IMG/VR virus record: IMGVR_UViG_3300033233_000001
Coordinates: 186,001-250,000 of that record
Direction: 5' to 3' (one strand)
DNA length: 64,000 nucleotides
The position numbers were made by a program, and so were the translations under genes. Below the pieces are notes generated by a model that worked only from the letters and a program-made list of their open reading frames with translations, was not told the origin of the DNA and ran no database searches. Below are positions 22,220 through 50,177 of this stretch, piece by piece. The first letter of the stretch is position 1; each line of letters starts with the position of its first letter.

Positions 22220-22843
22220 TCAAGGCGGTAGGATCTGCGCGATTGCAGAGAGCTTCAGCCCGTTCCCCGCGCCGCCGCCGGTGTTGTCCGCGACGAGGTC
22301 GAGCACGTCGCCGCTGGCGAAGGCCACGGCCACCGCGGACACCTGCTGTGCGAGCGAGCCGGCGGGCACGGTGACGGTCATTCCCGTCGGCGCCGCGTTC
22401 TTGAAGATCGTGAGCACCGTGTCGGTCGTAAGCGTGCTGAACACCGGCTGCACCGTGATCTTGCTGAGTGTGCACGCCGGCATCGGATAGGCGACGGACC
22501 CGTGGATCGAGTCGCTGGCATTCTCGCTCAACGAGTCGGTAATCACGACAAGTACCTGCAAGACGTTATCGCCCTGGAACTGTCCAGAGAACTTCAGCAA
22601 GCTCGGCACAGCGCCGACAGCTGCAATCGCAACCCAGACAGCCGCGCCGGGCGTCGGGTCCGTACAGACGTACAAGGACGCCACGTCAACGACCCAGGCA
22701 AGATCGCCAGCCTGAATCTCAGACGTATACCCGCCATCCGTGAACGCCGCGGTGTTTGGCAGCTGCGCAGCGGTATTCCATTGTCCCCACCAGTGGTGAA
22801 AACGCCATGGCGCGACGGGTCTTTGGCCTGCAATGAACGTCAT
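22220..22843 (-). CDS. Putative spike/receptor-binding protein
   Basis: AGDLAWVVDVASLYVC...W fibre-type segment followed by a beta-rich domain. Confidence 0.5.
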   Translation of the reverse strand: MTFIAGQRPVAPWRFHHWWGQWNTAAQLPNTAAFTDGGYTSEIQAGDLAWVVDVASLYVCTDPTPGAAVWVAIAAVGAVPSLLKFSGQFQGDNVLQVLVVITDSLSENASDSIHGSVAYPMPACTLSKITVQPVFSTLTTDTVLTIFKNAAPTGMTVTVPAGSLAQQVSAVAVAFASGDVLDLVADNTGGGAGNGLKLSAIAQILPP

Positions 22844-22848
22844 GGTCC

Positions 22849-23367
22849 CTAGCGCTTTCTACGCCTACGATTCTTCCGTGCCCGGCGCCGGCCGCGGTTG
22901 TTCGCAAGGCTCGTGCTCTGATGCTTCTCGGCCATGAGACCGCCGAGCACGGCAAGACCGAAGACGCCAGCGGCGACTACCCCGAGCGCCGCGATCGGAC
23001 TCATTGGCGTCGCTGCCTGGCCGAGGCCACCAAGCTGACGACGGCCGGGTCTCCACCCGGCGTGGCCCATCCGAAGAGCAGGGCTGACGTGCGTCACTCT
23101 GGACGCCGATCCGCCCAACCGACGAGCGCAGTACGCCTGTCCTCTGTTCTTCAGCATGGCGCGCGCCTGAGGCTCGGAGAGCATAATCCCGTCGAGCCGG
23201 AGGTTGCGCAGCACTCCACGAATCTCCGAGGTATACCCCTCGAAGTTGCGTCGTACGGCATGGCACAGGTGGGCTGCACCGTAGGCCCGAACCCACCACA
23301 GCACCAACAGTTCGGCAGGCGACCTGGTTTCGCCCACCGCGTACATGTCCTGCCCCATGCCGTACAT
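22849..23367 (-). CDS. GLG membrane protein with basic tail
   Basis: MYGMGQ, GGLGQ, TM, ANNRGRRRARKNRRRRKR. Confidence 0.75.
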   Translation of the reverse strand: MYGMGQDMYAVGETRSPAELLVLWWVRAYGAAHLCHAVRRNFEGYTSEIRGVLRNLRLDGIMLSEPQARAMLKNRGQAYCARRLGGSASRVTHVSPALRMGHAGWRPGRRQLGGLGQAATPMSPIAALGVVAAGVFGLAVLGGLMAEKHQSTSLANNRGRRRARKNRRRRKR

Positions 23368-23376
23368 TTGAACCTC

Positions 23377-23913
23377 CTACATCACGACGAGCGAGCCGAG
23401 CCCGGAGACGGCCGGCGGCGGCACAGGCGTCGCGACGACAGGCGGCGGAGCCGACGGAAGCATCACCGGCATCGCGTGCTGCCGGCCCTGCCACCAGCGG
23501 TAGGCGAGGTAGCCGCCGCCCGCGAGAAGGAGCCACGTCATCGTGTCCGGGTTCCGACGAAGACGATGGTGCCCGCGGTTCCGACGGACGCTCTTGCCGC
23601 TCTTGCTGCTGCGCTTCTTGCTGTGACGCTTCCTGCTGGCCATGTGCTCTCTCCTGTTCGTTACTGCCTTCGACCGTGGCTTGCGACCGTGTCGCCAGCC
23701 TTCCTGCTGTTCCAGTGCCTCGCTGTTGTTGACGAAGTCGTCCGCCGTCAGGCGCGCTCGAACGCCCCCAGGCAGCGAGATCGAGTAGACATGGGCGCCG
23801 GACCCCTTCCGGCTCTCGGACGCGACCATGCCGTTCTTGCCGCGGTGCTTGCCGCCGATGATGGTCACGCTGTCACCGACGTAGGTGATGAAGCTGCGGC
23901 GCGGCGTCGTCAC
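23377..23913 (-). CDS. KOW/SH3-like domain, basic tract, RRNP, TM (possible internal start MASRK)
   Basis: VGDSVTIIGGKHRGKNG; internal AGGAG RBS. Confidence 0.65.
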   Translation of the reverse strand: MTTPRRSFITYVGDSVTIIGGKHRGKNGMVASESRKGSGAHVYSISLPGGVRARLTADDFVNNSEALEQQEGWRHGRKPRSKAVTNRREHMASRKRHSKKRSSKSGKSVRRNRGHHRLRRNPDTMTWLLLAGGGYLAYRWWQGRQHAMPVMLPSAPPPVVATPVPPPAVSGLGSLVVM

Positions 23914-24293
23914 ACGCGGCCTCCAAGCGACTGCATGTCGCCTTCGTACTGCCCGTGATCGTAGTTGCCGATACCGACGACATCGCGCATCGGCCCAATG
24001 TTCGCGCGCGCACCGGGAATGCGGCGATAGGCGAACGCGATGTCATCGCGAACCCAGCGGCTCCCGAGCCCGCTGAGCACGATCGGCGTCCGCTCATAGC
24101 CGATGTGGTGCATATAGTTGAGCGGCATCCCGATCATCATGTCGGGGCCCCAGCCGTACGGGCTGTAGATCGAGCCACGCGGCGACAGGCGCGCCGCGTA
24201 CGGATCGACCGCCTCGGCAAACCACGAGGTCGACGTCGTGCCGGGCGACACGAAGCCCATCCCTGGGCGGCGCAGCGGTCGACGGTAGCTCAT
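23910..24293 (-). CDS. MSY-GMG/GLG protein
   Basis: MSYRRPLRRPGMGF...SGLGS. Confidence 0.7.
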   Translation of the reverse strand: MSYRRPLRRPGMGFVSPGTTSTSWFAEAVDPYAARLSPRGSIYSPYGWGPDMMIGMPLNYMHHIGYERTPIVLSGLGSRWVRDDIAFAYRRIPGARANIGPMRDVVGIGNYDHGQYEGDMQSLGGRV

Positions 24294-24601
24294 CGCACGC
24301 CCGCCTGTCGAAGCGCATCGCCGATGCCGTCGAGGACCATCGCCATCTCGCGCGATACCGCTTTCCATTCGCGCGCGACCGCGCTGTCCTGCTCAGCGGC
24401 GACGGCAATGCCGCTGCTGCAAGCGAGGTCGGAAGCCATCATGTACGCCGCGAGAGCCTTCAACACGTGTCCAGTCTCCAGTTCGTCCTCAGCCGTCGAG
24501 AGGATGTGGTCTACGTCGCGCAGAGTGCGCGCAGCGCTGTTACGCACGAGCGAGCGAGGCCGGCGCGAGGGCGCTCGTCGACTGGTGCGCCTGCGTCTCA
24601 T
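24290..24601 (-). CDS. Basic-tagged small helical protein
   Basis: MRRRRTSRRAPSRRPRSLVRNS then a helical domain. Confidence 0.7.
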   Translation of the reverse strand: MRRRRTSRRAPSRRPRSLVRNSAARTLRDVDHILSTAEDELETGHVLKALAAYMMASDLACSSGIAVAAEQDSAVAREWKAVSREMAMVLDGIGDALRQAGVR

Positions 24602-25392
24602 TCGTCATCCGCCCACTTCAGTTCGTCTTCCACCTCGTCGACCCACAGCATCGGGTCACTCGCCTTGACCGAGCCACCGCCCATGCCGTCCGGAAACTTC
24701 TTGCTCTTGATCGGCGCGGTGCCCTTGTGCTCGTAGATCTCGACCGCTACCGCTCGCCCATCACCGCCATGCTCGGCGTAGTACACGCGCTGGTCATAGA
24801 AGACCGCGTCGTAGTCCTTGCCGTTCGCCGTGAATCCGGCCGTCCAGATGCCGTGCGATGTGCCGCTTTTCGCATGCCAGCCGAGCTTACGAAGCTCCTC
24901 AGTCTGGTCGTCCGACGCGAGTGACCACGCACGGATGAGACTCAGGTCTTTGCCGTGGACCTCGTCGGCGCCCCACTCGTCACTGGCGACAAACGGCGGA
25001 CTGTACTGGCCCTTCTGACACTTCAGTGTCGTGTGGCCGATGAGTGTCAGGTCCGCCTCGGCAGCATCGCGTACCTTCTCCGCGTTGCGCTCCGAGAGAT
25101 CGTGGATGCCACCGGCAGGCCACTCGACGCCGAGATCTTCGGCTGCGGCCTTGTAATCGCTCTCGTCGAGGAACGTGAAGATGCCGCACTTGCCCTCGTC
25201 GTCCAGGTAGTCGACAGCGTACTCGAAGGCGTCGTCGAAGCTGCCAGCCCACACGAGCAGTCGCAGCGGCGCGTGCGCATCGAACCACATGAGAAAAAGC
25301 TCGCCGCTGTCGGCATCGCTCCCGTTGACGATGGCGAGGTCAAGCAGATCGAAGTCGCCTCGGGCGTTCTTGCGTGTGCGCGCCATGGTCAA
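24598..25392 (-). CDS. Acidic hypothetical protein with short basic leader
   Basis: MTMARTRKNA; coupled ORF. Confidence 0.75.
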   Translation of the reverse strand: MTMARTRKNARGDFDLLDLAIVNGSDADSGELFLMWFDAHAPLRLLVWAGSFDDAFEYAVDYLDDEGKCGIFTFLDESDYKAAAEDLGVEWPAGGIHDLSERNAEKVRDAAEADLTLIGHTTLKCQKGQYSPPFVASDEWGADEVHGKDLSLIRAWSLASDDQTEELRKLGWHAKSGTSHGIWTAGFTANGKDYDAVFYDQRVYYAEHGGDGRAVAVEIYEHKGTAPIKSKKFPDGMGGGSVKASDPMLWVDEVEDELKWADDE

Positions 25393-25931
25393 CCCAGGTT
25401 CCTGGCCCGAGACTCGAAGCTGCTCTCGAACTGCCGAGCCGGCGAGCGGTCGCCGTAGACCTCGGAGTAGTCCTTGGCGTACCCGAAGTGGTGCTCGACG
25501 GCCTCGCGCGCCGTGTACGGGCCGGAGTCGAGGAACTCACGAAGTGTACTGAAGTGGAAGTAACCGACGCCGTTGATGACCTCGACGATCTGCTTGGCGG
25601 TGTCGTCCCAGGACTTCTCCGGCGACAGGCGCCACTTGTAGTCCTTCTTGTCGAGTTCGGCGACGAGCCCGACCTTCTCGAAAGCGCTCTCAACGGTCTC
25701 TTCGATCGAGGCCATGTACGCGTCATGGTACCAGGCTTCGAGGTCTGACTCGGCCTGCATGGCGAACTGCTCCGCCTCTTCGCCTTCGAGGCCCTCTTCC
25801 GCCGCCTGCCGTAGCGCGTAGCCGTAGACGTCGCTCTGGTCCATGTTCACGCTGTCCTCGAAGGACGGCAGCTTGAACGCGCGCAGGACGCTGTCGAACT
25901 CGACGATGATGGGTTTTGCTCCGCGTGCCAT
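25389..25931 (-). CDS. Acidic hypothetical protein
   Basis: ATG at 25931 after GAGG. Confidence 0.75.
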   Translation of the reverse strand: MARGAKPIIVEFDSVLRAFKLPSFEDSVNMDQSDVYGYALRQAAEEGLEGEEAEQFAMQAESDLEAWYHDAYMASIEETVESAFEKVGLVAELDKKDYKWRLSPEKSWDDTAKQIVEVINGVGYFHFSTLREFLDSGPYTAREAVEHHFGYAKDYSEVYGDRSPARQFESSFESRARNLG

Positions 25932-25938
25932 GGCTGCC

Positions 25939-26787
25939 TCAGTAGTTGAACGCGACAGACACGAGGTTGTTCGTCGGCGCAAATGTCGGCACTCCGTTGG
26001 CAGTCGCGATGAGCGCCTGTCCACCGTTCAAGTTCGGCAAGATGCCAGGCGCAAGCGGCGCAGCGCTAGTTGCAGTCCAGCGGTCCGACGTCTTACCAGC
26101 GATGGCCGCGACTTCCGCGTTGTTGCGTGTGTCCTTGAACCACTGATCGATCTCGGCCGCAGTCAACGCGAACGCACCGCCGGCCACGCCGTTGACCGAC
26201 GGGAAGATCGGATCGAGCGTGCCGAAGATCTTGAGAACCGACGCTGGCACCGCATAAGGCGCCACCGTTGCAACAGAGAACGCCTGTACGTTGTCCACGT
26301 AGAACGTTACGCGGGCGCCAGCACCTTCCGAGACGACCGTGACCAACCCGACCGTCACAGTGTCCCAGTCGTAGTTGAGCACGCCAGTCGACGCTGGCAG
26401 CCCAGTCCCAGGAAGCATGAATGGCGACTCTGCGTCGTTGCACGTCAGCACGATCAGCTGCTGATTTTCCGTGTCGCCTGGCGAAACTGTCTCCGTCAAG
26501 AATGCGGCCACACTTGCGAACAGACCGTCCGGCAACCCGGTGCCTGCGGTAACAGCAAACGCGGCTCCGAACGCCGTCGCGGTCGTCGTCACACAGGCGA
26601 AGCCGAACCACAGCGGCATTGGTCCCTGCGAGAACGACGGCGCAACAAGCGGGGCCTCGTAGTTCCAGAAGTCAGCGAACGTGTCTGCGCCGAGGTTGAA
26701 GAACCACATGTTGACCGGCGACTGCGGGCTTACGCCCTTTCGCCGGCCCCACGGACTCTTCCAGAGCATGCCCTTCTTGGCGGTCAT
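25939..26787 (-). CDS. LamG/concanavalin-like beta protein (vertex/spike candidate)
   Basis: W..V...........TFYVDNVQ...ALTAAEI..WF pattern. Confidence 0.55.
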   Translation of the reverse strand: MTAKKGMLWKSPWGRRKGVSPQSPVNMWFFNLGADTFADFWNYEAPLVAPSFSQGPMPLWFGFACVTTTATAFGAAFAVTAGTGLPDGLFASVAAFLTETVSPGDTENQQLIVLTCNDAESPFMLPGTGLPASTGVLNYDWDTVTVGLVTVVSEGAGARVTFYVDNVQAFSVATVAPYAVPASVLKIFGTLDPIFPSVNGVAGGAFALTAAEIDQWFKDTRNNAEVAAIAGKTSDRWTATSAAPLAPGILPNLNGGQALIATANGVPTFAPTNNLVSVAFNY

Positions 26788-26912
26788 GTGTACCGGGCTG
26801 ATCGACGACTGAAGGTGAGGTCTGGACCCTGCTACGGCTGGGCGCCTCGACGCACGGAGTTCCTCTGGGCTGGAAATCGTCGTCAGATCCAGACCCCACC
26901 TTCAATCGTCGT

Positions 26913-27590
26913 TCAGGTACCTCCTCCGCTAAGTCTGTTGAGGATACGGTCTAGCTGGAACTCTGGCACCACGAAGCCGTTGATCTCGACCGAAAGTAGC
27001 TTGGTCTCGAACGGTGGCGCGCGCAGCGCAATGGCGTTCGCTTCGATCGTCTGGCCGGGTCGCACGTAGCTCGCGAAGTTCCGCAGGCCGACCTGTGAGT
27101 CGCCGCCGAACGGATAGAAGCTGCCGCCGCCAGGAGTCGGCGGCGACGCCGGGAAGCCCTGCGGTGTCAAGATCACAGCGCCCTTGACGGTCAGGTTCGT
27201 CTGATAGTCGAGCGTGCCCCTTCCGCCGACCTTCAGCTGAAAGCCGAAGACGGTGACTAGGCGCGTCGGATCGACCTCGACGATGTCCTGTGGATCGATG
27301 CCAGAGTGTTCATAGACCTTGAAGACGGAGTTCTGGAGGACGATGCAGGCTTCCTTCGGCGCGACCAGCCGAAGGAGGTTGATCGGCCGCGGGTACGGCG
27401 GCGTGCCGCCGAGGGCCACCGGAATCGGATACTGCGCGAAGAACGGACGCTGGAAAAACGTCAGCTGCTGCGACGGCAAGAACTGAAAGTAGGCGTCGAG
27501 AACGCGGACGTTCTCCACCGTCGGCGCGACCTCTTCTTGAGGTAGCGGCGACGGCGCCTGGCTATGCAGCCTGCCGGGACGACCTACCAT
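26913..27590 (-). CDS. Putative minor capsid (jelly-roll-like) protein
   Basis: Beta-rich, Pro/Gly-rich, ends V.INGF; position after the MCP. Confidence 0.5.
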   Translation of the reverse strand: MVGRPGRLHSQAPSPLPQEEVAPTVENVRVLDAYFQFLPSQQLTFFQRPFFAQYPIPVALGGTPPYPRPINLLRLVAPKEACIVLQNSVFKVYEHSGIDPQDIVEVDPTRLVTVFGFQLKVGGRGTLDYQTNLTVKGAVILTPQGFPASPPTPGGGSFYPFGGDSQVGLRNFASYVRPGQTIEANAIALRAPPFETKLLSVEINGFVVPEFQLDRILNRLSGGGT

Positions 27591-27600
27591 GGCCGTCCGA

Positions 27601-28536
27601 TCAGACCGCCGGGCTCTCGGCCTGGAGGATCTTGTAGCCGCACATCGTGAAGTACACGGTGCCGCCGAGGTTGACGGCGAGCCGGCCGACGTTGTTGGCC
27701 GCCGACGGATCTGGCGCTGGAACTAGCTCGCCCTCGGCAAAGCCGAATCCAGGCAAGAAGCCGCCTCCCGGAAGCGTAGCCCAGTTGACCTCGGCGATGC
27801 CGATCTCGTGCATCAGCGTCATCTTCCAGGTCACGGTGGAGCCGCGCTCGAAGAAGTCGCCGACAGGCAGATAGAACGGCCGATCGAACTCGCTGAAGAT
27901 GTAACGAGACGGGATTGGGATCTGATTCTGCCGGTTGCGGTTCGAGGCGTTGTCCTGGATCTCGAACAAGTAGTCGATCTCGCCAGGCCGGAACGTCTGG
28001 ACCGCTTGCGCGCCAGCAACCGTGATGGGACCAACGCGCGCACCGATGTACGCCCCGGAGAACGGATCTGCGGTCGATGCGACCGGGCGGAACCGACCGG
28101 TGAGCGGCGTGATGACCTCGGTGCCTGCCGGCGGGTCACTCGGCCGACCGTCGTACGGTCCCTGCGAGTACGTCCGCATCAGAAACGCGCTCATGTAGCT
28201 CGTGCAGACGAACGGTCCGTCCATCGACACCTGCTTGTTGTCGAGCAACTGCGTGCCGGCGACAGTCAAGCCGGGCTCAGTCGGGCCCGGAATGTCGATG
28301 GAAAAGTTCAGGAAGTACGGGACGCGCTTGCCGGGAATGTCCTCGATGTACCGGATGCGCTTCTGCGACTTCGAGAGCGCTTCCTGCATCCGCCGAAGCT
28401 CAAGCTGCTGGGACTCGTAGTCGGTCGCCAGCTTGCCGTAGCGTTCGTTGAGAACCTTCGTGCGTGCAAAGAGCTTCCGGTGTTGCTCTTCCATCTGGCG
28501 GAGAACCGCCGCTGTTTCCGGGTCGTGAATCGGCAC
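27601..28536 (-). CDS. Putative capsid-associated jelly-roll protein with N-terminal coiled coil
   Basis: Coiled coil, then beta-rich domain ending VYFTMCGYKI. Confidence 0.55.
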   Translation of the reverse strand: MPIHDPETAAVLRQMEEQHRKLFARTKVLNERYGKLATDYESQQLELRRMQEALSKSQKRIRYIEDIPGKRVPYFLNFSIDIPGPTEPGLTVAGTQLLDNKQVSMDGPFVCTSYMSAFLMRTYSQGPYDGRPSDPPAGTEVITPLTGRFRPVASTADPFSGAYIGARVGPITVAGAQAVQTFRPGEIDYLFEIQDNASNRNRQNQIPIPSRYIFSEFDRPFYLPVGDFFERGSTVTWKMTLMHEIGIAEVNWATLPGGGFLPGFGFAEGELVPAPDPSAANNVGRLAVNLGGTVYFTMCGYKILQAESPAV

Positions 28537-28616
28537 TTGCTACCGTCCTTTGGCCGTTGGATTTCTCCCTGTGGCCGTTGGGCTGGTTGTGGTGCGCCGA
28601 CTCGGACGTCGGCGAC

Positions 28617-29675
28617 TTATTTTGGAACGGCCCGAACCTTCTCTGGCCTCTCCACGTCGCAGGTTGCCTCGTTCACCATCGAGAGCGACCTGCCGAACCT
28701 CTTCGCGATCTCCCGACACGGTACGCCTGACCCTGCCAGCGATCGCCACTCGTCTACTTCGGAACGCGGAACTCGTTTCTCCATGGGGAAGCGCGGTTTC
28801 GTAACCAGACCAAGCTCTTCTGTCGATCTGTTCGATGTCGGAACGATGTCTTTGACGACCGCATGCACTACCGAGTTAGCACGCCCGTAATGCCTTCCGA
28901 TCGCCACGATCGACGCACCATCTGTCCTGAGCCTTCGCCACTCTTCTTGGATCTCGTCCGTCAGTCCCGAGTTGACACCCGACCAGAATGACGACTCTCC
29001 TCCAGCTGCCCGGCGACCAGTCTTAGGTTGAAAGCCAGAGTCGAGAAGCGCCTTCCACTTGAGCGACCGAAGCCATTCCCCAATCGCCGCGACGTGGGCC
29101 TGACGATCGACGATGACGTAGTTCATCTCTTTCTGAGACGGCGGCGCCGAGATACGCGCGCTCCACCCTCTCGCCCTCAGAGCGCGGCGCACCCACCCGA
29201 TCAAAACGCCTGGCTTCTGAGCGAAGCCGAACTGCGCGCCATTGCTCGCGGACCGCTTCTCTGTCTTTCTAAGAAACCAGCCGTCCGTTTCGACCAGCGA
29301 CTTCAGGAAGAGCCTTGTGCACTCTTCGTCGTCATCCACCCACCGTGGCGGCGGTACCATCAGCTTATCGGCACCAGCACCGATGTACTTGTGAGCGACG
29401 CCGAAGTCGCCAATCACGTCATGCGTCGTCCAGTAGATCTCGAAGAAGTCACCGAACTCCTCGGTAAGCGCCTTCATGTGCTTCTGGTACACGTGGTACC
29501 CACCGTAGACGAGCGTGAACAGTTCTTTCACGCGCATCAGCCATGCTGGGTACTTATCGCCTACGGTGACGGCCACCTTCCAGCTTTGCTTGCCGCGCTG
29601 CTGGATGTAGCCGTCACCGAAGACGGCGCCCAAGAGTTCCGCTTTATACCCGTTCACGCACCGCTCGCTTGACAT
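28617..29675 (-). CDS. Free-standing two-motif LAGLIDADG homing endonuclease with C-terminal HTH-like repeats
   Basis: LLGAVFGDGYI and FLKSLVETDGWF; lower GC3; two HTH-like segments. Confidence 0.85.
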   Translation of the reverse strand: MSSERCVNGYKAELLGAVFGDGYIQQRGKQSWKVAVTVGDKYPAWLMRVKELFTLVYGGYHVYQKHMKALTEEFGDFFEIYWTTHDVIGDFGVAHKYIGAGADKLMVPPPRWVDDDEECTRLFLKSLVETDGWFLRKTEKRSASNGAQFGFAQKPGVLIGWVRRALRARGWSARISAPPSQKEMNYVIVDRQAHVAAIGEWLRSLKWKALLDSGFQPKTGRRAAGGESSFWSGVNSGLTDEIQEEWRRLRTDGASIVAIGRHYGRANSVVHAVVKDIVPTSNRSTEELGLVTKPRFPMEKRVPRSEVDEWRSLAGSGVPCREIAKRFGRSLSMVNEATCDVERPEKVRAVPK

Positions 29676-29737
29676 CGGCTCACCTCTCGTTGAGAGGTAG
29701 CACCTTCTGTCCTGCGCGCTAAGTACGCGAAATCAGG

Positions 29738-31280
29738 CTACAAAACGTCCCTTGAATGAATGCCATCGAGCACGTACTTGATGTCCTTCTCGATGTCGTC
29801 CTCGCCGGGAACCGAGAGGCCCGTGCCCGTCGCGATGCCGGTCGTGAGACCGGAGCCGGTGATGATCGCGTTCGGGCTGTTGTTCGGCACGAGGCCGTTC
29901 AGCTGCTCGATGACGCTCGCGCCGGGCGTCTGCCCGATCGGCGAAGCGATCGCGATGACCTGGAAGCCCTGACGCGGCGGGATGAGAATCGGCCTCGCCA
30001 GACGCATCAGCGCGGACGACGTCGGAACGCCGTTGTTCGCGCGCGGGAGACGGCTGTCCGAGAAGAAGCCATCGAGACCACCCGCCATCGGGGTGTACGC
30101 CGTGAACGTGGTCAGCTGCGGCTTGTCGCCCGCCACCATCTGCCAGAAGAACTGGTTCTGGCTCTGGTGGTAGAGCTTGTGCACGCGCATGATACGGTCG
30201 GGGAACACACCGTCGACCGAGCCGATCGGCTGGGCTCCCGGAGTCGGCTGTGCGATCACGACCGGTGCTTCCGGGTTGAACCGGAAGTACGTCCAGACGC
30301 GCACCGCGAGGGTGATGTACGTCTGGTCGGACGGGAAGAAGCCACCCGTCGTCAGGTTCGACACCGAGATGTCGGCGCCCTGACGAACGAACAGCTGCGC
30401 GCGGTTCGGGACTGCCCCGAACACGCCCTGGTTGGTGTTGCGGAGGTCCACGTCACCGTCGACTCGGATGAGCGAATCGTAGACTTCAGTTACGCCAGAA
30501 GTTTACTCTGGCTCTCCGGATTTCTCCGGAGTGTCGGACTATATCACCAACCGTCAGTTGACGGTCGCCGGGCGCTCTTGGGTCGGATTATCGTTGGAAC
30601 TCACCGACCTAGTCTCTACACCTTCTACCGGCACATCAGCCATTCGATGTCCACCGATAGCTTGGCTCGGGATTACCTCGCGGAGAATCGCTTCTACCTC
30701 CACAGGGGCTTCCCCGCCGTTTCGCTTGATGACCGCCATGGTATCTAGGACAACAGCGTCTAGCTTCGTCTGTCGATACATGCGCACCAAGCAGGCGCGT
30801 GTCAGGAACCAGTCAACGACCTCTGCCTCTGTCTTCTTGGCTGTGAGGTGCGGCAGCAAGATCCTAGTGATCTTGAGCACGTCGTCTTTGCGTGCGACGT
30901 GCAACCAATACTGCCAGCGGGTCGCCTTCTTGCCCTTCCACACGCGACGGATTGGCTGGTGATGCACACCAACGTCCGTCAGGATCCGACTCACTCGATC
31001 GACCATCGCTTTCGAGGTGTTGCAGATGACTAGCCACAGCTGGTAGCTCGTCTTCTTTCCCTTGGCCTTCCCGCTCTTGCGGACGATCGGGCGCTTCACT
31101 GCGAAGCATCCCTCTCCATCCACAATCCCGGCCAGCCAGGCGACGTCGGTCTCGTTCATCTTCTCCTTCTACCACGAAACGGTTTGATTCACCCAGTTGT
31201 TCACCGCTGAGTTACCTCAGCGGGCCGCCCTACTTCGACGGCTGATGAACGCGCTCACGGGTACCTACGATCTTGGGCAT
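29738..31280 (-). CDS. Putative major capsid protein, vertical jelly-roll type, 262 aa after splicing (exons 31280-31238, 30483-29738)
   Basis: Spliced frame MPKIVGTRERVHQP-F-YDSL; LF...SNL...G.FPSDQ; NNGVP..L.RPI.IP; LDG..SRDV; strong RBS. Confidence 0.65.
30484..31237 (-). mobile_element. Group I intron (754 nt) in the capsid gene
   Basis: P1 GCCGT/GCGGC; P3 CTGGGTG/CGCCCGG; AATCCCGAGCCAAG, GTGTAGAGACT, GATATAGTCC; ends in G; removal restores frame. Confidence 0.92.
30554..31159 (-). CDS. Intron-encoded single-motif LAGLIDADG endonuclease
   Basis: VAWLAGIVDGEGCF; own AGAGGAG RBS. Confidence 0.92.
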   Translation of the reverse strand: MNETDVAWLAGIVDGEGCFAVKRPIVRKSGKAKGKKTSYQLWLVICNTSKAMVDRVSRILTDVGVHHQPIRRVWKGKKATRWQYWLHVARKDDVLKITRILLPHLTAKKTEAEVVDWFLTRACLVRMYRQTKLDAVVLDTMAVIKRNGGEAPVEVEAILREVIPSQAIGGHRMADVPVEGVETRSVSSNDNPTQERPATVN

Positions 31281-31495
31281 TTCTCTATCTCTCTTTGTTG
31301 ACTCTCGGTGCCACCCTAGGGTTTCTTCCACCGAGATTTCGTGCGATCCACTCATCGCACTACCCGCTGATTCAGACGGCCCTTATCCCTTGATCGGGAT
31401 TTAGGCCGTCTCCGTGTTCCGAAACCTCCCAGCGGTAGGAGGCTTTTACCCGTCGGCTACCGGAACACGGAGAAGTCTTTGCGTTGCTACACCAT
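31281..31495 (-). promoter_or_regulatory. Highly structured leader upstream of the capsid gene
   Basis: Stems CTCCGTGTTCCG/CGGAACACGGAG, GACGGCC/GGCCGTC, GTGCGAT/ATCGCAC, TCTCGGTG/CACCGAGA. Confidence 0.55.
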
Positions 31496-32104
31496 TCAGC
31501 TTCCAGCGAATAGGTTGCGTGCGTAGAGACCGCCCGCATAGCCACGGCCGTCCGCGGCCGCGAACGGTTCACGTACCCGTCTGATCTGCTTTTGGAACGT
31601 CGCTGGCAGTGCGAGGTCCATCGGGATGACGGTCGAGACCGCCGGAGGCTGCATCGGACCACCGAGTCCGAGCATCCCCTGGTATGGCGCGCCATAGTGG
31701 GCGACATCCACCATCGGGTCTCCAAACCCAGACACGTTCGACGACGCCGGCATCGCAGCGGCCTGAGCCGGCGTCGCTTGCACCATCGCCATCGCCCGCG
31801 GCAGGTACGGCATGATCGCCGAGATCCCCATGCCAGTCGCGAGAGCCTGACTGACCTCGTCCGACATCCCGATCCCACCGCCCATCACGAGCGCCAAGGC
31901 CCCACCGCCAGCGCCAGTGATCGCCATGAGCATCTTCGGATCCTGCCCTACGAGCAGGCGACCAACCACGTTGTCGCTCAGCCACGAAGCGAGCAACATG
32001 CCGCCCGCGCCGACGAGAGACGGCACGACGAGACGATGGACGATGCCCGTCGTCGGGTCACCCTCTGCGTTTCGGCGCAGCCTCTTGTTTCGGCGCTTGC
32101 TCAT
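31496..32104 (-). CDS. Virion membrane protein with basic leader
   Basis: MSKRRNKRLRRN, several Gly-rich TM helices, ends GRGYAGGLYARNLFAGS. Confidence 0.8.
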   Translation of the reverse strand: MSKRRNKRLRRNAEGDPTTGIVHRLVVPSLVGAGGMLLASWLSDNVVGRLLVGQDPKMLMAITGAGGGALALVMGGGIGMSDEVSQALATGMGISAIMPYLPRAMAMVQATPAQAAAMPASSNVSGFGDPMVDVAHYGAPYQGMLGLGGPMQPPAVSTVIPMDLALPATFQKQIRRVREPFAAADGRGYAGGLYARNLFAGS

Positions 32105-32133: not shown

Positions 32134-34356
32134 TCAGAACATGCCGGCGAAGAGGTTCCGCGCGAAGAGGCCTCCGGCGTAGCCGCGACCTTCGGGGGTC
32201 ACGAGCGACGACGGGATCTTTCGCTCGTACGGCATCTCGCCCGTGATGAGCTTGGCGCCCTCGACCGGCGTCTGGATCGACGCGAACGGGGGCTCCATGC
32301 GACCGCCCTCCGTCATGCTGCCCGGACGAACGAAGTCCGGGTGCTTGCCGTACCAGCCGTCGATGTCCGTCTCCTCGATGTACTCGCCGACGCCGCCGAG
32401 GCCGGCCGCCGCGTAGTACGTCTGACCGACGCCCGCCGCTGCCTCCATCACCGTGTTCCCCGTGGCCTCCATCACGTCCATGAGGCCGTCGACGCCCTCC
32501 TGATTCGCGGGATCGATGCCCTCGTGGTAGCCGGCCGCCGCGTAGTACGTCTCGCGACCGAGTCCGGCCGCGGCGTAGTACGTCTCGCGACCCATGCCGT
32601 GGCTCGGGTCGTCGACGTACGCGCCCAGGCCCTGCATCGGCTGCTCGACGTACTCGCCGAACGCGCCCATCGGCTGCTCAACGTACTCGCCGAGGTACGA
32701 CGCCATGCCAGTGCCGCGGAGTAGACGCGCGATGAGCGCGAGGCCCATGCCGGTCAGCACCGGTGTCGCGTTCTCCGTGATCATCGACATCTTGCCTGCG
32801 CGATGCGCCCAGGCCGAGAGGCCGAGAGCGCCAGCGATGACCGCCGCGTTCACGATGCTCTTCGTGGCGAGCGCCGCATCTGCCGGACGGCCCGCATCGA
32901 GCACGCCGCGGACCTGATCGCTGTTCGCAGCCAGGTTCGACAGCGCATTCGCTGCCAGGAAGCCCGCGGTTGCGTAGCCAGCCGGCATCGCGATGTCCGT
33001 GATCACGTCCTTGCCGTAGAGCTTGAAGAAGTTCCGACGAAGCCGGTGGCGGCGACGGTTCTTCGACATGCCCGTGGTCTGCGGAACGTAGATCGGGTTC
33101 CGGCGCGAATGCCGGCGGCTCTTCTTGCTCTTCCTCTTGCGGCCCATCGAGTGCCTCCTTGCGTTCTTCGTTACGGCCTTCTTCGAGCCGCGTGCCTTCT
33201 TCGACTTGCGTGCCGCCCTACGCGGCTTGCGCGAACGAGCCTTCGCCTGGATCATCCGAGCAAGCTCGGGACCCCACGATCCACGCTTCGAGTGCGCCCG
33301 ACGTGCGACGCCACCGAACGTGAACTTGCGCGTGTAACCCTTCACGCGACGGCCGCCGACCGAGACGGTCGACTTGCGGCTGCTGCCCGGACGGTAGAGC
33401 ACCGTCTGGCGGGCGCCGGTCAGAAAGTTCGGGTGGACGCGACGCGACCGGCGACGGCGGCTGCCGCGACGGCTGTTCCGACGCGAGCGGCGGCGATTGC
33501 CAAAGAGCCCGCGCGACGCACGACGACGACTGTTCCGGCGCGGTCGACGCGAGTGCGCACGACGTGACGTGTTACGGCGTGATCGACGGCGATGGCGGTT
33601 CGCCGCCAACTCGTGGAACAGCGGCGAGCCGTACATGTGATGCGACGAGCGGAACGTCGGCGTACCAGAGACGTGCGACTTGCTCGCGCGCTTCTTCGAC
33701 GAGCGCTTCTTCGAGCCGCCCTTCGACCGGCGCTTCTTCGATGCCTTCTTCTTGCTGGCGGCATTTCGCCGCGAACGACGACGACCGTTGCGACGTGATG
33801 CGCGGCGGCGGCCACCACGACGGCTCGTGTCTCGCCGCGAGCGCCTGCGACCGGCGTTTCGACGACTCCGACGGCGCGCGCTCCGGCGCGACGCGCGACG
33901 GCTGCCTCGGCGGCTCGTGTCCTTCCTCGATGCCCGACGGCGCGTACGCCTGTTCGCCGCGGCCTGCATCAGCGGGTTGCGGCGCGAAGCCTTGCGCGAA
34001 CGGCGACGCTTGCGACCGGCGCCATGGGCGACGACGCTCATCAGTCCGCCACGGTTACGGCGGACCGACGCCGTGCCAGGCGCGTGCGAACGACGCTTGC
34101 GGGAGCCACTCCTCTTCCGCTTGCGGCCAGCGTTGGCACGCATCGCAGCGCGCAGTCCCGGGTAGTTGTACGCCATCGAAACTCTCCTGCGACTAGGGTT
34201 CTTGGATCCGACGAGCGGAGAGCCGTGCGGATGCTTCGGTCGGCCTGGATTCACCACGGCGAGATGCGTTACGCCGCCCGGATTGGGCGCCATGCCCGGC
34301 GTTCGGTCGTACGACCTCGCCGCGCCTTCGCTGCTTCTCCGGTAGATCAAGGCCAC
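32134..34356 (-). CDS. 740-aa Arg/Ser/Lys-rich core-like membrane protein
   Basis: Long RRxRRN-type tract, TM region, YYAAAG repeats, ends GRGYAGGLFARNLFAGMF. Confidence 0.8.
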   Translation of the reverse strand: MALIYRRSSEGAARSYDRTPGMAPNPGGVTHLAVVNPGRPKHPHGSPLVGSKNPSRRRVSMAYNYPGLRAAMRANAGRKRKRSGSRKRRSHAPGTASVRRNRGGLMSVVAHGAGRKRRRSRKASRRNPLMQAAANRRTRRRASRKDTSRRGSRRASRRSARRRSRRNAGRRRSRRDTSRRGGRRRASRRNGRRRSRRNAASKKKASKKRRSKGGSKKRSSKKRASKSHVSGTPTFRSSHHMYGSPLFHELAANRHRRRSRRNTSRRAHSRRPRRNSRRRASRGLFGNRRRSRRNSRRGSRRRRSRRVHPNFLTGARQTVLYRPGSSRKSTVSVGGRRVKGYTRKFTFGGVARRAHSKRGSWGPELARMIQAKARSRKPRRAARKSKKARGSKKAVTKNARRHSMGRKRKSKKSRRHSRRNPIYVPQTTGMSKNRRRHRLRRNFFKLYGKDVITDIAMPAGYATAGFLAANALSNLAANSDQVRGVLDAGRPADAALATKSIVNAAVIAGALGLSAWAHRAGKMSMITENATPVLTGMGLALIARLLRGTGMASYLGEYVEQPMGAFGEYVEQPMQGLGAYVDDPSHGMGRETYYAAAGLGRETYYAAAGYHEGIDPANQEGVDGLMDVMEATGNTVMEAAAGVGQTYYAAAGLGGVGEYIEETDIDGWYGKHPDFVRPGSMTEGGRMEPPFASIQTPVEGAKLITGEMPYERKIPSSLVTPEGRGYAGGLFARNLFAGMF

Positions 34357-41226: not shown

Positions 41227-41730
41227 TCAGAAGTAGAGCCCGCCGCCGTTCCAGCGCTCCATGATCTCGTCGAGCACGGCCTGCTCTTGCTCTCGGTCGG
41301 TGGCGTCCGGATCGGGCTCGTCGAGCTTCGGGATGCTTCGGCCACGCTTCGGATGCTTCTTGAGTAGAGCGTCGAGATCCCTCACGTGCATGTACGTGCC
41401 CGACTCCTGCTCCGCCTTGCCCTCCAGGATCATCTCGTTCAGCTGCTCGCGAAGGTCGTCGTCGTCCGCCACCTTCGGCGTCTCGCCATAGTCGAAATCG
41501 ATGAAGGTCAGTTCGTAGCTGGGCGTGATCTCTGCGACGTGAACATGCTTGTTCTTGTCGTACGCGTACACGCCGAAGATCTCGGTCGTCATGGCCTTGA
41601 TGTCGTCGCGCCAATGCTGGCGCTCGTCGAGCTTCACCAGACGCCAGTCTGGCTTTATCTCGGCCGGGTTGCGACGCACCGGCTTACGACTACCGCGCTT
41701 CGGCTTCCTGCTGGTCCTCTTCTTCGCCAT
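41227..41730 (-). CDS. Basic-tagged acidic protein (merged with the upstream gene in the ORF track)
   Basis: TGA-GGAGAAGG-ATG; MAKKRTSRKPKRGSRKPVRRNP. Confidence 0.7.
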   Translation of the reverse strand: MAKKRTSRKPKRGSRKPVRRNPAEIKPDWRLVKLDERQHWRDDIKAMTTEIFGVYAYDKNKHVHVAEITPSYELTFIDFDYGETPKVADDDDLREQLNEMILEGKAEQESGTYMHVRDLDALLKKHPKRGRSIPKLDEPDPDATDREQEQAVLDEIMERWNGGGLYF

Positions 41731-41740
41731 GACCTTCTCC

Positions 41741-42891
41741 TCAGTTCGCCACGAGCCGCGCCGCCTTCCGATGCCGGATGCCCTTGTGCTTCGCCGTCTG
41801 CGCGTGAGCCAGTCGGTACCCAGGCCATCCTTCCGCCACACGGCAGGGTAGTGCTTCATGATGAAACTGCGGATCGCCATGTAGTCGCCCGCGTTGCGCA
41901 CGCGTCCCATTCGGATGTACTTGATGGCGTCGCGCGCGCCCTGCGCGCTCTCGATCGGCCACGCGCGGTCCTTGGGGAACACGAACTTCGATGCTGGCAG
42001 CTTCGTGCGGCGCTTCTTCGAGAGACGCGGATTGTAGTAGAAGGTCTGGTTCGGACGCGACCGTCGTCGACCGTTCGACGCCACGGATGCGAGCATGGCG
42101 CGCGCCTGTCGCACGATACAATCGTCGCCGTGGCCGCACGGGCCACCGGGCGCGATCGGGCCGCGTCCATGGGAGTGGTCTCCGGTCGCTTCGTAGGCGG
42201 CGAGCGCGGTACGGATCGACACCGGATCGCCCGCCTCCATCGCCCGCACGAGGGCTTTGAACGCGGCGTGCTTTTCTGCGACGCGTGAGGGCGGGTTCCG
42301 GCGAGACGTGCGCTTGCCGTCGCGCATCGGCATCTCGGCGATGCTGGCGTTCGGGTACGCCCTCTTCGCGCGCGAGCGCCTCTTGCCCTTGAGGCCCCGC
42401 GACGAGCGCCGACGCCAGCCGTTCTTGCGCGACCGCCTCTTGCTACGATTCGCGGTCGCGGCCTTCGCCTTCGGCTTCTTGGTCACCATGAACGCCACGC
42501 CGATGACGCCTAGAACGCCAACCGCGCCAAGCACCGGCCAGTACCACTCGGTAGCGCTCGGCTCGACGTAGGGCGCGACGGGCCCGGCCGGCGGCGTCGC
42601 CGTCTGCCCGCCCTGCGTGGCCGTGATGATGCTCGCCGCGATCGTGCCTGCCGTCGTCAGCCCCGTGCTGACGTCCTGCGCCGTGTGGTCAGGCGCGCCG
42701 GGCTTGGTCTGACCGAGACCCATCATGCCGGCAAAGAGGTCGCGTGCGGGAGTCCGACCAAGGCCAGCCGCGCCCCACACCGGCGCATGCACGGGGATAA
42801 CGCGCGCGGTCACGCCCCTCGCCGTCACGCCCCTGGCCGTCACGCCACGGTACGCCCAGCCCAAACCGTTCATCGGTGCTCGGTAACTCAT
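41741..42891 (-). CDS. MSY-GLG membrane protein with basic linkers and extra domains; probable 1-nt frameshift near 41809
   Basis: GVTAR x3, GLG x3, TM; LP.SKFVFP..R.WPI domain; alternative frame ends KAARLVAN*. Confidence 0.65.
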
Positions 42892-44260: not shown

Positions 44261-44272
44261 GACGCTCGAATC

Positions 44273-47185: not shown

Positions 47186-47197
47186 GTCTTCGTCTCC

Positions 47198-47656: not shown

Positions 47657-47658
47657 GA

Positions 47659-48093: not shown

Positions 48094-48103
48094 GCTCGTC
48101 CTC

Positions 48104-48847: not shown

Positions 48848-48889
48848 GCCCAGCCTTTCGTGTGTGCCCAGTTATCGTTCCCAGAGACC

Positions 48890-49384: not shown

Positions 49385-49398
49385 ATGACTTCTTCTCC

Positions 49399-50174: not shown

Positions 50175-50177
50175 GAC

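What the first reader, a model, noticed from the sequence alone, without database searches (positions are those of the whole stretch)
22220..32104. Jelly-roll capsid module in a genome larger than 64 kb with no tailed-phage genes: possible oversized tailless virus
Seen: a spliced 262-aa beta-rich protein with QPFYDS, LF..SNL..G.FP, NNG.P..L..PI.IP and LDG..R motifs, preceded by a Gly-rich membrane protein and followed by two more beta-rich proteins and a LamG-like protein. No terminase, portal, tail or HK97 gene is recognisable in 64 kb. Established: characterised tailless jelly-roll bacterial viruses (PRD1, PM2, P23-77) have genomes of only about 10-20 kb. Inference: a much larger, tRNA-carrying membrane-containing lineage. 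The fold is judged from motifs only, so single versus double jelly-roll is unresolved.
Basis: partly seen in the sequence, partly recalled or inferred. Interest (0 to 1): 0.8.

Follow-up and report, generated by a model that had tools for sequence, protein, structure and literature searches.

The report
Jelly-roll capsid-like module, 298-kb phage
A complete ~298-kb virus-like genome, probably of Planctomycetota bacteria, carries an intron-split, very conserved gene predicted to fold like the capsid proteins of small tailless membrane-containing viruses. No tailed-phage gene is recognisable in the half of the genome that could be read, so it may be the first very large tailless bacterial virus, but this is not proven.

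Summary
A 262-aa protein is encoded in two exons (31280-31238 and 30483-29738, minus strand), split by a 754-nt group I intron that carries a LAGLIDADG endonuclease. Intron-less homologs read straight across the junction (…HQP-F-YDS…).

An AlphaFold model (pLDDT 80, pTM 0.81) is a single eight-stranded jelly roll. Its structural neighbours are almost all viral jelly-roll capsid proteins, led by SPV1, then SH1 and P23-77. No match is statistically significant (E ≥ 0.01).

This protein is the most conserved gene of its neighbourhood. In 18 of the 19 loci that carry the second conserved protein (27601-28536), only intergenic DNA or a homing-endonuclease ORF lies between the two genes.

Pfam and PHROG scans of 114 proteins here and 133 in distant relatives found no terminase, portal, HK97 capsid or tail gene. 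They also found no FtsK-HerA ATPase.

The genome is a complete, circularly permuted 297.7-kb contig with at least 28 tRNAs. I read 155 kb (52%) of it without finding any hallmark gene; 143 kb remain unread.

About 15 proteins share an MSYR…GLG start, and many also have a C-terminal membrane anchor and an Arg/Lys tail. This fits a membrane-containing virion.

Verdict: partly supported. Probability about 0.5 that this is a jelly-roll capsid virus.

The parts
31238..31280 (-). Exon 1 of the capsid-protein candidate (MCP1): ATG, 14 codons (MPKIVGTRERVHQP) and the first base (T) of the Phe codon.
   Evidence: sequence and frames. Intron-less homologs start with the same 14 residues. Contigs of relatives join 31238 to 30483 exactly.
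30484..31237 (-). Group I intron, 754 nt. The 5' splice site follows a U that pairs with a G in P1 (exon GCCGU pairs with intron GCGGC). The last base is G.
   Evidence: Rfam RF00028 scores 23.2 bits, E 0.0057, here. The homologous intron at the same site in L014 scores 30.1 bits, E 1.3e-5. Both are below the gathering score of 50. By my reading of the alignment, several stems show compensatory changes between the window and L014/L028. The same insertion site occurs in a lineage whose MCP1 is 61% identical.
30554..31159 (-). LAGLIDADG homing endonuclease ORF (201 aa) inside the intron.
   Evidence: Pfam LAGLIDADG_3, E 0.001, below the cut-off. phrog_5046 endonuclease, E 2.3e-11. The motif LAGIVDGEG is visible. 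A 62%-identical copy sits in the L013/L014 intron.
29738..30483 (-). Exon 2 of MCP1 (the remaining 248 codons plus the stop). The spliced product is 262 aa with a predicted single jelly-roll fold.
   Evidence: The AF2 model of the 93%-identical P0002 has pLDDT 80.2 and pTM 0.81. Foldseek hit lists are dominated by jelly-roll capsid proteins. It is the most conserved gene of the neighbourhood.
28617..29675 (-). Free-standing endonuclease-like ORF (352 aa) between MCP1 and the next conserved gene. It has a LAGLIDADG-like N-terminus and a helix-turn-helix.
   Evidence: HTH_38, E 5.9e-5, below the cut-off. Homologs lie in the same intergenic position in L004-L009, and part of those homologs also matches the intron endonuclease. 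The assignment is weak.
27601..28536 (-). Second conserved structural protein (MCP2 candidate, 311 aa): an N-terminal coiled coil of about 60 aa, an IRYIEDIPGKRVPY motif, and a domain of about 240 aa that is presumably a beta-sandwich.
   Evidence: It lies just downstream of MCP1 in 18 of 19 loci, separated only by intergenic DNA or a homing-endonuclease ORF; in L021 a 775-aa transposase-like ORF lies between them. These loci include the distant clade (24-29% identity). ESM-Atlas gives beta-sandwich neighbours, and the nearest named families are PM2 P2 and PRD1 P3, which is a lead only. The fold was not modelled.
26913..27590 (-). Third beta-sandwich candidate (225 aa; the true start may be V25). 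It could be a penton or a third capsomer subunit.
   Evidence: It is conserved in 11 loci of the close clade at 31-49% identity. ESM-Atlas structural neighbours include GH172 (TM 0.53), and the nearest named family is PM2 P2. The fold was not modelled.
25939..26787 (-). Function unknown.
   Evidence: No Pfam, PHROG or PDB match. Homologs occur in only 2 loci.
31496..32104 (-). 202-aa Gly-rich membrane protein that ends in GRGYAGGLYARNLFAGS.
   Evidence: Translation. Hydrophobic segment. Conserved in 10 loci.
32134..34356 (-). 740-aa protein with about 400 aa of Arg/Ser/Lys-rich repeats, hydrophobic segments, GEYVE/TYYAAAG repeats, and the same C-terminal motif GRGYAGGLFARNLFAG. A candidate DNA-condensing, membrane-associated core protein.
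   Evidence: Translation. Conserved in 11 loci. The protein at the same position in distant L001 shares the GEYV repeats. No family match.
22220..24368 (-). Four small genes at the low end of the finding: 207 aa (unknown); 172 aa (membrane anchor plus an RRRARKNRRRRKR tail); a 178-aa basic protein; 152 aa (internal MSYRRPL…GMG start).
   Evidence: The Pfam container scan found a weak KOW hit (E 2e-4) in one window protein, but it does not say which one.
41227..59655 (-). Block of paralog-like proteins with an M[ST]Y[RT]…GLG N-terminus, a C-terminal membrane anchor and an Arg/Lys-rich tail. Examples: 41227-42891, 42891-43940, 46265-47185, 49689-50174, 50178-51113, 51002-52102, 53064-54518, 58903-59655. 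They are inferred to be virion membrane proteins.
   Evidence: The same N-terminal signature occurs in relatives L012 and L017-L019.
56..1859 (-). The part of a tRNA gene array that lies inside the window: 11 genes by ARAGORN plus one more by Rfam. The array has 28 genes over about 6.5 kb.

Best explanation
Window 22-34 kb is the core of the virion-building module of a complete dsDNA virus of about 298 kb, probably infecting Planctomycetota or other PVC bacteria.

The shell would be built from jelly-roll proteins, not an HK97-fold protein. MCP1 (262 aa) is a single jelly roll. Its loop between GGLDG and NNGVP accepts insertions of 100-220 aa in relatives, as an outward-facing tower loop would. 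MCP2 (311 aa) follows MCP1, with at most a homing-endonuclease ORF between them in nearly all loci. It would be the partner subunit, as in the two-capsid-protein viruses P23-77, SH1 and SPV1. The 225-aa protein could be a vertex or third subunit.

MCP1 can be made only after a group I intron, a mobile element with its own LAGLIDADG endonuclease, splices out of the mRNA.

Around this core lie many tail-anchored membrane proteins with Arg/Lys tails and a 740-aa Arg-rich protein. I infer an inner membrane whose protein tails, together with basic core proteins, bind and condense the DNA.

Shown: the gene structure, the intron, the family and its synteny, the predicted fold, and the absence of recognisable tailed-phage genes in 52% of the genome. 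Inferred: the capsid role, the membrane, the DNA condensation, the lack of a tail and the host.
For: - Splice junction and intron.
- Fold: AF2 gives pLDDT 80.2 and pTM 0.81, with eight main strands and one helix.
- Foldseek against PDB: by my count of the listed descriptions, roughly two-thirds to three-quarters of the top 50 hits are viral jelly-roll capsid proteins. The best by probability are the SPV1 capsid chain 6oj0_A (prob 0.98, TM 0.46), SH1 6qt9_h and P23-77 VP16/VP17. No HK97 or tail-tube protein appears.
- Foldseek against BFVD: SPV1 VP4 and several unnamed viral entries at prob 0.9 or higher.
- ESM-Atlas: for MCP1, MCP2 and the 225-aa protein alike, the nearest named clusters are the PM2 P2 and (for the first two) PRD1 P3 capsid families. 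Structural neighbours include GH172, a cellular jelly-roll relative of capsid proteins.
- Conservation: MCP1 is 61-72% identical in the close clade, where neighbouring genes are 30-60%. The MCP1-MCP2 pair is kept in all clades.
- Exposed-loop insertions in homologs.
- No terminase, portal, HK97 capsid, sheath, tube or baseplate family among 114 proteins here and 133 proteins of six distant loci. The PHROG matches named baseplate hub, lytic tail protein, tail fibre and tape measure in the relatives were not traced to their proteins. Pfam found SLT lytic domains in two of those proteins and no baseplate or tail family.
- Nothing in the Pfam tables of a further 70 kb.
- Tail-anchored basic-tailed proteins.
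- Binning with Phycisphaeraceae, Planctomycetota, Pirellulales and Lentisphaeraceae MAGs.
Against: - No Foldseek match is significant (best E 0.01-0.02, TM at most 0.46). Jelly rolls also occur in non-capsid proteins.
- The folds of MCP2 and the 225-aa protein were not modelled. MCP1 and MCP2 show no profile similarity.
- No FtsK-HerA/A32-type packaging ATPase, nor any convincing P-loop protein, lies in the late gene block. In known jelly-roll viruses that gene sits next to the capsid genes.
- 143 kb (48%) of the genome was not read and could hold an HK97 head and tail module.
- To my knowledge, every prokaryotic virus above about 100 kb characterised so far is tailed.
- The automatic taxon labels of Atlas clusters say Uroviricota for the minority of members that have a label.
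- A beta-helix protein and a Gly-rich fibre-like protein elsewhere in the genome would fit tail fibres as well as capsid spikes.
Confidence: 0.5

Rival explanations
1. This is a tailed jumbo phage (Caudoviricetes) of a very divergent lineage. Its HK97 capsid protein, portal, terminase and tail genes lie in the unread 143 kb, or are too divergent for Pfam and PHROGs. The conserved jelly-roll proteins would then be accessory virion parts, such as decoration or cement proteins, baseplate or fibre parts, or inner-body proteins.
For: To my knowledge, all known phages above 100 kb are tailed. Only 52% of the genome was read. Some accessory genes have homologs in jumbo tailed phages: the 817-aa protein matches phrog_2319 at 4.5e-52 and Tunturi_5, RsoM2USA and KVP40-like phages. 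Beta-helix and Gly-rich fibre-like proteins are present. There is a weak phrog_53 'head maturation protease' hit at E 7e-4. Atlas labels say Uroviricota. No jelly-roll-type packaging ATPase was found.
Against: The co-directional late-type gene block, about 66 kb or more, has no recognisable head, packaging or tail gene, although enzymes of the same genome are readily recognised by Pfam (helicase, primase, RNA ligase). The protease hit falls on an Ala-rich, low-complexity, coiled-coil-like stretch. MCP1 is more conserved than every neighbour, hosts a homing intron, and resembles capsid jelly rolls, not tube or decoration folds. About 15 tail-anchored membrane proteins with basic tails would be unusual for a tailed phage.
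Confidence: 0.33
2. This is not a capsid module. The element is a giant plasmid-like or otherwise non-viral element, or the block encodes something other than a virion. In that case the jelly-roll proteins and tail-anchored proteins form a cell-envelope, vesicle or compartment structure.
For: No packaging enzyme or any other classical virus hallmark gene was identified in 155 kb. There are many toxin-antitoxin genes, TnpB elements and RNA-repair genes. The fold matches are not significant.
Against: Relatives were collected in IMG/VR as viral contigs, and the contig itself is an IMG/VR entry. The genome has a 28-tRNA array, homing introns and inteins, almost no cellular housekeeping genes, and a phage-like tightly packed one-strand gene layout. 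No replication or partition genes of plasmid type were seen. Two assemblies give circular permutations of the same length, as for a phage genome.
Confidence: 0.1

Closest known systems
Two-capsid-protein single-jelly-roll viruses (Sphaerolipoviridae SH1/HHIV-2, Simuloviridae, Matsushitaviridae P23-77/IN93) and Portogloboviridae SPV1
   Same: The predicted single jelly-roll capsid protein has its best structural neighbours here: SPV1 6oj0_A at prob 0.98, SH1 and P23-77. Two different conserved structural genes sit side by side. Many membrane proteins suggest an inner membrane.
   Different: The genome is 298 kb against 16-31 kb. No sequence similarity exists, and the structural matches are non-significant. 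No FtsK-HerA ATPase lies next to the capsid genes or anywhere in 155 kb. MCP2 has an N-terminal coiled coil. The genome also has tRNAs, introns, inteins and Arg-rich core proteins. The host is bacterial (PVC), not a halophilic archaeon or Thermus.
Double-jelly-roll phages PRD1 (Tectiviridae) and PM2 (Corticoviridae)
   Same: These are tailless, membrane-containing bacterial viruses. The protein language model places all three candidate proteins nearest to the PM2 P2 capsid family, and two of them also near PRD1 P3 (scores 0.72-0.76, leads only). SLT lytic transglycosylase domains in relatives recall PRD1 P7.
   Different: MCP1 has one jelly roll, not two. The genome is 20-30 times larger. No A32/P9-type ATPase or protein-primed polymerase was seen.
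Jumbo tailed phages (e.g. Tunturi_5, RsoM2USA, KVP40-like vibriophages)
   Same: Genome size, a large tRNA array, homing endonucleases, inteins and RNA-repair genes. One shared accessory protein family, phrog_2319.
   Different: No HK97 capsid, portal, terminase, sheath, tube or baseplate family was detected in 52% of the genome, including its large late block. The MCP1 family is absent from 50,697 GenBank phage records.
Phage group I introns with homing endonucleases in structural or replication genes
   Same: The 5' splice site follows a U·G pair. The intron ends in G, has a core matching RF00028 and holds a LAGLIDADG ORF. It is present or absent at one identical site among relatives.
   Different: The scores are below Rfam's gathering threshold. 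Splicing of this copy has not been observed in RNA.

Membership tests
Single-jelly-roll two-capsid-protein viruses (Helvetiavirae-type; SPV1-type) | Major capsid protein with a single eight-stranded jelly-roll fold | tested here: met
   AF2 model with pLDDT 80.2 and pTM 0.81. Foldseek hit lists are dominated by jelly-roll capsid proteins, with SPV1 at prob 0.98, but every E is 0.01 or higher. This is a prediction, not an experiment.
Single-jelly-roll two-capsid-protein viruses (Helvetiavirae-type; SPV1-type) | Two different jelly-roll capsid proteins encoded side by side | tested here: inconclusive
   The adjacency of MCP1 and MCP2 is conserved in 18 of 19 loci. The MCP2 fold was not modelled; only Atlas neighbours suggest a beta-sandwich.
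Single-jelly-roll two-capsid-protein viruses (Helvetiavirae-type; SPV1-type) | FtsK-HerA-type packaging ATPase next to the capsid genes | tested here: not met
   No P-loop protein lies in the late block. No FtsK/HerA family appears in any Pfam or PHROG result over 155 kb or in six distant loci.
Single-jelly-roll two-capsid-protein viruses (Helvetiavirae-type; SPV1-type) | Inner lipid membrane | not testable with these tools
   Only inferred, from 12 or more tail-anchored proteins with basic tails.
Double-jelly-roll viruses (Tectiviridae, Corticoviridae and relatives) | Capsid protein with two jelly rolls in one chain | tested here: not met
   The model of the 260-aa protein has one sandwich of eight main strands. 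Family members are 190-290 aa long.
Caudoviricetes (tailed phages) | HK97-fold major capsid protein, portal and large terminase | tested here: inconclusive
   None was detected in 114 proteins of the window plus 20 kb, or in the Pfam tables of a further 70 kb. 48% of the genome is unread, and very divergent versions cannot be excluded.
Caudoviricetes (tailed phages) | Tail genes (tube, sheath, tape measure, baseplate) | tested here: inconclusive
   None is detected in the window. In relatives there are PHROG hits named baseplate hub (phrog_196, E 1.7e-32), lytic tail protein, tail fibre and tape measure, together with two SLT-domain proteins and no Pfam baseplate or tail family. The proteins hit were not identified. 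Scanning the ten largest proteins did not find them.
Group I introns | 5' splice site after a U paired with G in P1, and a terminal G | tested here: met
   Exon …GCCGU| pairs with intron GCGGC. The intron ends …CUGAAG|. The junction is fixed by intron-less homologs and by joined contigs of relatives at 31238|30483.
Group I introns | Conserved catalytic core (match to RF00028) | tested here: inconclusive
   23.2 bits, E 0.0057, here and 30.1 bits, E 1.3e-5, in L014. Both are below the gathering score of 50. By my reading of the three-sequence alignment, stems show compensatory changes.
Group I introns | Splicing seen in RNA | not testable with these tools
   No RNA run holds this genome. The joined forms seen come from relatives and may be intron-less DNA.

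The most novel reading that the evidence does not exclude
This is a previously undescribed, deep lineage of bacterial viruses of about 300 kb, with hosts in Planctomycetota/PVC. Its large icosahedral, membrane-containing, tailless virions would be built from two or three single-jelly-roll proteins unrelated in sequence to any known capsid family. The DNA would be condensed by Arg-rich core proteins and by the basic tails of membrane proteins. It would be packaged without a recognisable terminase or FtsK-HerA ATPase. That would break the rule that large prokaryotic virus genomes need HK97 heads.
Probability: 0.4. Interest if true: 0.92.

Novelty: new variant of a known kind. Interest (0 to 1): 0.74.

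Why it matters
[quoted passage not shown] To my knowledge, every prokaryotic virus above about 100 kb is a tailed HK97 phage.

A 298-kb jelly-roll virus of bacteria would show that this capsid architecture scales to giant size in prokaryotes as well as in eukaryotic giant viruses. That bears on the origin of large jelly-roll-capsid viruses. It would also open a virus group for Planctomycetota, whose viruses are hardly known.

The family is widespread: hundreds of clusters from sediment, soil, fresh water and wastewater. Hardly any of its proteins have been described. Even if the tailed-phage reading wins, this is a very dark jumbo-phage lineage with an unusual set of tail-anchored, basic-tailed proteins.

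Tried and rejected
- Pfam and PHROG scans of the module's ten proteins gave only endonuclease and HTH hits.
- tblastn of MCP1 and megablast of 22 kb against 50,697 phage records gave no match.
- Profile searches of the MCP1 and MCP2 families against PDB sequences gave only chance or coiled-coil hits.
- A profile-profile comparison of MCP1 with MCP2 showed no relationship.
- The first AF2 run, with a shallow alignment, gave pLDDT 56 and was discarded. It was redone with distant homologs.
- The weak 'head maturation protease' hit on 51002-52102 was rejected as an Ala-rich, low-complexity match.
- The 'baseplate hub' and tail-named PHROG hits in relatives could not be traced to a protein. They are not in the ten largest proteins.
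- Walker-A scans found no packaging ATPase candidate in the late block.
- The 1196-aa P-loop protein (SVGKT, FVDEDP, QAVHRIRP) looks like a helicase, not a terminase. It has only 3 homologs and no PDB match.
- tblastn of three large unknown proteins against the phage records gave nothing.
- Attempts to reach the unread half of the contig through dispersed repeats or TnpB paralogs failed.
- Literature searches found no description of such a lineage. The 'moraphages' are a different group with Bacteroidota hosts.
- No RNA run holds this genome, so splicing could not be observed.
- 'LamG-like' for 25939-26787 has no support.

Full report
**What is in the sequence.** The window is 65% G+C, and almost all its genes lie on the minus strand.

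The capsid-protein candidate (MCP1) is split.
- Exon 1 (31280..31238) encodes MPKIVGTRERVHQP plus one base.
- Exon 2 (30483..29738) continues …(F)YDSLIRVDG… to the stop. The total is 262 aa.
It is produced exactly by this junction.
- 246 homolog clusters exist. Most are 260-290 aa and intron-less, and they begin MPKIVGTRERVHQPFYDSLIRVDG.

**The intron.** The 754-nt intervening sequence behaves as a group I intron.
- The 5' exon ends in U, which can pair with G in a five-pair P1 (GCCGU with GCGGC). The intron ends in G.
- Rfam's group I model matches its 3' part at 23 bits (E 0.0057), and at 30 bits (E 1.3e-5) in a homologous copy. Both scores are below the curated threshold of 50.
- The same intron sits at the identical site in L013/L014/L028, whose MCP1 is only about 61% identical. 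By my reading of the alignment, stems differ by compensatory changes.
- It carries a LAGLIDADG endonuclease ORF.
- Contigs of relatives in public runs join 31238 to 30483 exactly. No RNA data set holds this genome, so splicing itself is inferred.

**Fold.** With an alignment of close homologs only, AlphaFold gave a poor model (pLDDT 56). An exhaustive search found relatives down to 23% identity, mostly 190-260 aa.

With 55 diverse sequences the model reached pLDDT 80.2 and pTM 0.81. It has eight main strands and one 17-residue helix, which is a single jelly roll.
- Foldseek found no significant match in PDB or BFVD (best E 0.01-0.02).
- The lists nevertheless consist largely of jelly-roll proteins. 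By my count of the descriptions, roughly two-thirds to three-quarters of the top 50 PDB hits are viral capsid proteins (circovirus, SPV1, P23-77, SH1, iridovirus, nodavirus, picornavirus, polyomavirus).
- Most of the rest are cellular proteins that I know as jelly rolls (PNGase F, PHM, a TNF-type ligand). A few are unrelated, such as an RNA polymerase chain.
- The highest Foldseek probabilities go to the SPV1 capsid chain (0.98, TM 0.46) and to unnamed viral entries (0.92-0.94).
- No HK97, tail-tube or decoration fold appears.
- Homologs with 100-220 extra residues carry them all in one loop, GGLDG…NNG, as an exposed tower loop would.

**Neighbourhood.** tblastn of all window proteins against 21 related loci shows MCP1 as the most conserved gene. 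It is 61-72% identical in the close clade and about 30% in a distant clade.

The 311-aa protein (27601-28536) comes next at 49-61% and 24-29%. In 18 of the 19 loci that have it, it lies just downstream of MCP1, separated only by intergenic DNA or a homing-endonuclease ORF. In L021 a 775-aa transposase-like ORF lies between them. It has an N-terminal coiled coil and a domain of about 240 aa.

The 225-aa protein (26913-27590) is kept only in the close clade.

The ESM Atlas gives beta-sandwich structural neighbours for both (PepX_C, GOLD, GH172). As for MCP1, the nearest named clusters are PM2 P2 (all three) and PRD1 P3 (MCP1 and the 311-aa protein), at scores 0.72-0.76. The tool itself rates such scores as leads only.

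'LamG-like' for 25939-26787 has no support.

Upstream of MCP1 lie a 202-aa Gly-rich membrane protein and a 740-aa protein with about 400 residues of Arg/Ser-rich repeats. Both end in GRGYAGGL[FY]ARNLFAG.

**The wider block.** From about 20 to 60 kb:
- About 15 proteins begin with M[ST]Y[RT] followed within a few residues by GLG.
- At least 12 have a hydrophobic segment near the C-terminus.
- At least 17 end in an Arg/Lys-rich tail.
- A [KR][KR]TS[RGK] motif occurs in at least 18 proteins, including the Fic toxin homolog.

The N-terminal signature recurs in relatives, including the distant clade. I read these as tail-anchored membrane proteins whose basic tails face DNA. That is an inference.

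**Search for hallmark genes.** Pfam and PHROG scans covered 114 predicted proteins (the window plus 20 kb).
- They found toxin-antitoxin genes, DnaJ, RlaP, regulators and endonucleases.
- They found no terminase, portal, HK97 capsid, protease, sheath, tube, baseplate or tape-measure family, and no FtsK-HerA ATPase.
- The one 'head maturation protease' hit (E 7e-4) lies on an Ala-rich low-complexity stretch.

Scans of 133 proteins from six distant loci gave two SLT domains, DnaJ and glycosyltransferases. They also gave several PHROGs named after tails: baseplate hub (1.7e-32), lytic tail protein, tail fibre and tape measure. I could not trace these to their proteins. They may reflect the SLT lytic domains, since Pfam found no baseplate or tail family, but this point stays open.

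No convincing Walker A motif lies in a real gene of the late block.

**The genome.** The window is positions 186,001-250,000 of JGI contig 3300033233|Ga0334722_10000009 (297,749 bp), which is also an IMG/VR entry. An independent ENA assembly of 297,555 bp is a circular permutation of it. The genome is therefore complete and circular or terminally redundant.

Together they read window coordinates -17.5 kb to +137.1 kb, which is 155 kb or 52%. The additional genes found were:
- RNA ligase and a metallophosphatase.
- An SF2 helicase with an intein.
- RNase T and an AEP primase.
- Ro60/TROVE and an RRM protein.
- At least three TnpB genes.
- A 28-gene tRNA array.
- A 1196-aa helicase-like P-loop protein.
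- A beta-helix protein and a Gly-rich fibre-like protein.
- A 900-aa repeat protein with a membrane anchor and basic tail.

The great majority of the genes in these tables have no Pfam hit at all. No hallmark of either virus realm appeared. Positions 25,386-168,474 remain unread.

**Host and distribution.** MAG bins holding MCP1 homologs are Phycisphaeraceae, Planctomycetota, Pirellulales (twice) and Lentisphaeraceae, plus a few scattered others. The source is a sediment metagenome. Relatives occur in soil, aquatic and wastewater data, including metatranscriptome assemblies, and on contigs up to 180 kb.

**Assessment.** The interpretation passed the fold test and half of the 'elsewhere on the contig' test.

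For a jelly-roll capsid:
- The predicted fold and the kind of its structural neighbours.
- Conservation above all neighbouring genes.
- The conserved pairing with a second structural gene.
- Exposed-loop insertions and a homing intron.
- The absence of any tailed-phage gene in the whole late block.
- The many membrane-anchored and Arg-rich proteins.

Against:
- Non-significant structural scores.
- No packaging ATPase of the expected type.
- Half of the genome unread.
- The strong prior that large phages are tailed.

I put the jelly-roll capsid virus at about 0.5, a divergent tailed jumbo phage at about 0.33, and a non-virion role at about 0.1. No paper in the searchable library describes this lineage.

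Noticed in passing
window 41227-59655, and also 20429-24368: About 15 proteins start with M[ST]Y[RT] followed by GLG(Q) within 2-15 residues. Many end in a membrane anchor plus an Arg/Lys tail. The N-terminal signature is conserved in distant relatives (L012, L017-L019). It could be a sorting signal, a virion-targeting signal or a protease-processing signal.
   Followed up: partly
window-wide, e.g. 62945-63418, 55428-56770, 44273-45954, 40216-41217: A basic motif of the KRTSR type sits at the N- or C-terminus of at least 18 otherwise unrelated proteins, including the Fic/Doc toxin homolog. This looks like a shared tag for DNA binding or packaging into particles.
   Followed up: partly
window 31496-31550, 32134-32190 and 42690-42720: The 202-aa and 740-aa proteins end in the same motif, GRGYAGGL[FY]ARNLFAG. 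A related ARDLFAG lies near the N-terminus of the 554-aa protein.
   Followed up: no
window 56-1859 and L041:9907-16352: A tRNA array of 28 genes (ARAGORN) covers most amino acids and is interspersed with HNH endonuclease genes.
   Followed up: yes
L035:10267-14328: An SF2 helicase (ResIII, Helicase_C) is interrupted by an intein with a LAGLIDADG endonuclease. A homolog of the 1196-aa P-loop protein in another genome also carries a LAGLIDADG insertion (P0237).
   Followed up: no
window 28617-29675: A second, free-standing endonuclease-like ORF lies between MCP1 and MCP2. It sits in the same position in L004-L009, so the capsid gene pair is a hot spot for homing elements.
   Followed up: partly
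window 6846-7772 and 8096-8464; L024:10299-11399; L123:10001-14500: RNA-repair and RNA-binding genes: an RlaP nucleotidyltransferase, an RNA ligase, a Ro60/TROVE protein with a vWA domain, and an RRM protein. Toxin-antitoxin genes are also present (BrnT, HicA, MazE-Fic, AbiEii).
   Followed up: no
window 35837-38290: The N-terminal 470 residues of this 817-aa protein match phrog_2319 (E 4.5e-52) and proteins of jumbo tailed phages (Tunturi_5, RsoM2USA, KVP40-like vibriophages). It is the strongest link found to known phages. It is annotated RecT-like in one record.
   Followed up: partly
L039:9146-12808 (window coordinates about 121-124 kb): A 233-aa protein has an N-terminus (…RVYPRIRDSLIRASQG) that faintly resembles the MCP1 N-terminus (hhalign E 0.007 over 25 columns). 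It is followed by a 493-aa beta-helix protein and a 440-aa Gly-rich protein that look like fibres or spikes.
   Followed up: partly
L036:14142-16844: A 900-aa protein is made of about 20 repeats of PERLDRPVPQQPDSF. It has a J-domain-like stretch, a C-terminal membrane anchor and an RRRPKRNRRRRR tail.
   Followed up: no
window 19951-20658 and relatives: A DnaJ-domain protein with a zinc-finger-like centre lies near the module. DnaJ domains were found in 4 of the 133 proteins scanned from six distant loci (L001, L016, L017, L019-L021), so a J-protein seems to belong to the conserved set.
   Followed up: no
P0121, P0138, P0139 (homologs of MCP1): Some family members carry Cys-rich or beta-helix-like insertions of 100-220 aa in the GGLDG…NNG loop. 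This suggests a surface-exposed loop used for host interaction.
   Followed up: partly
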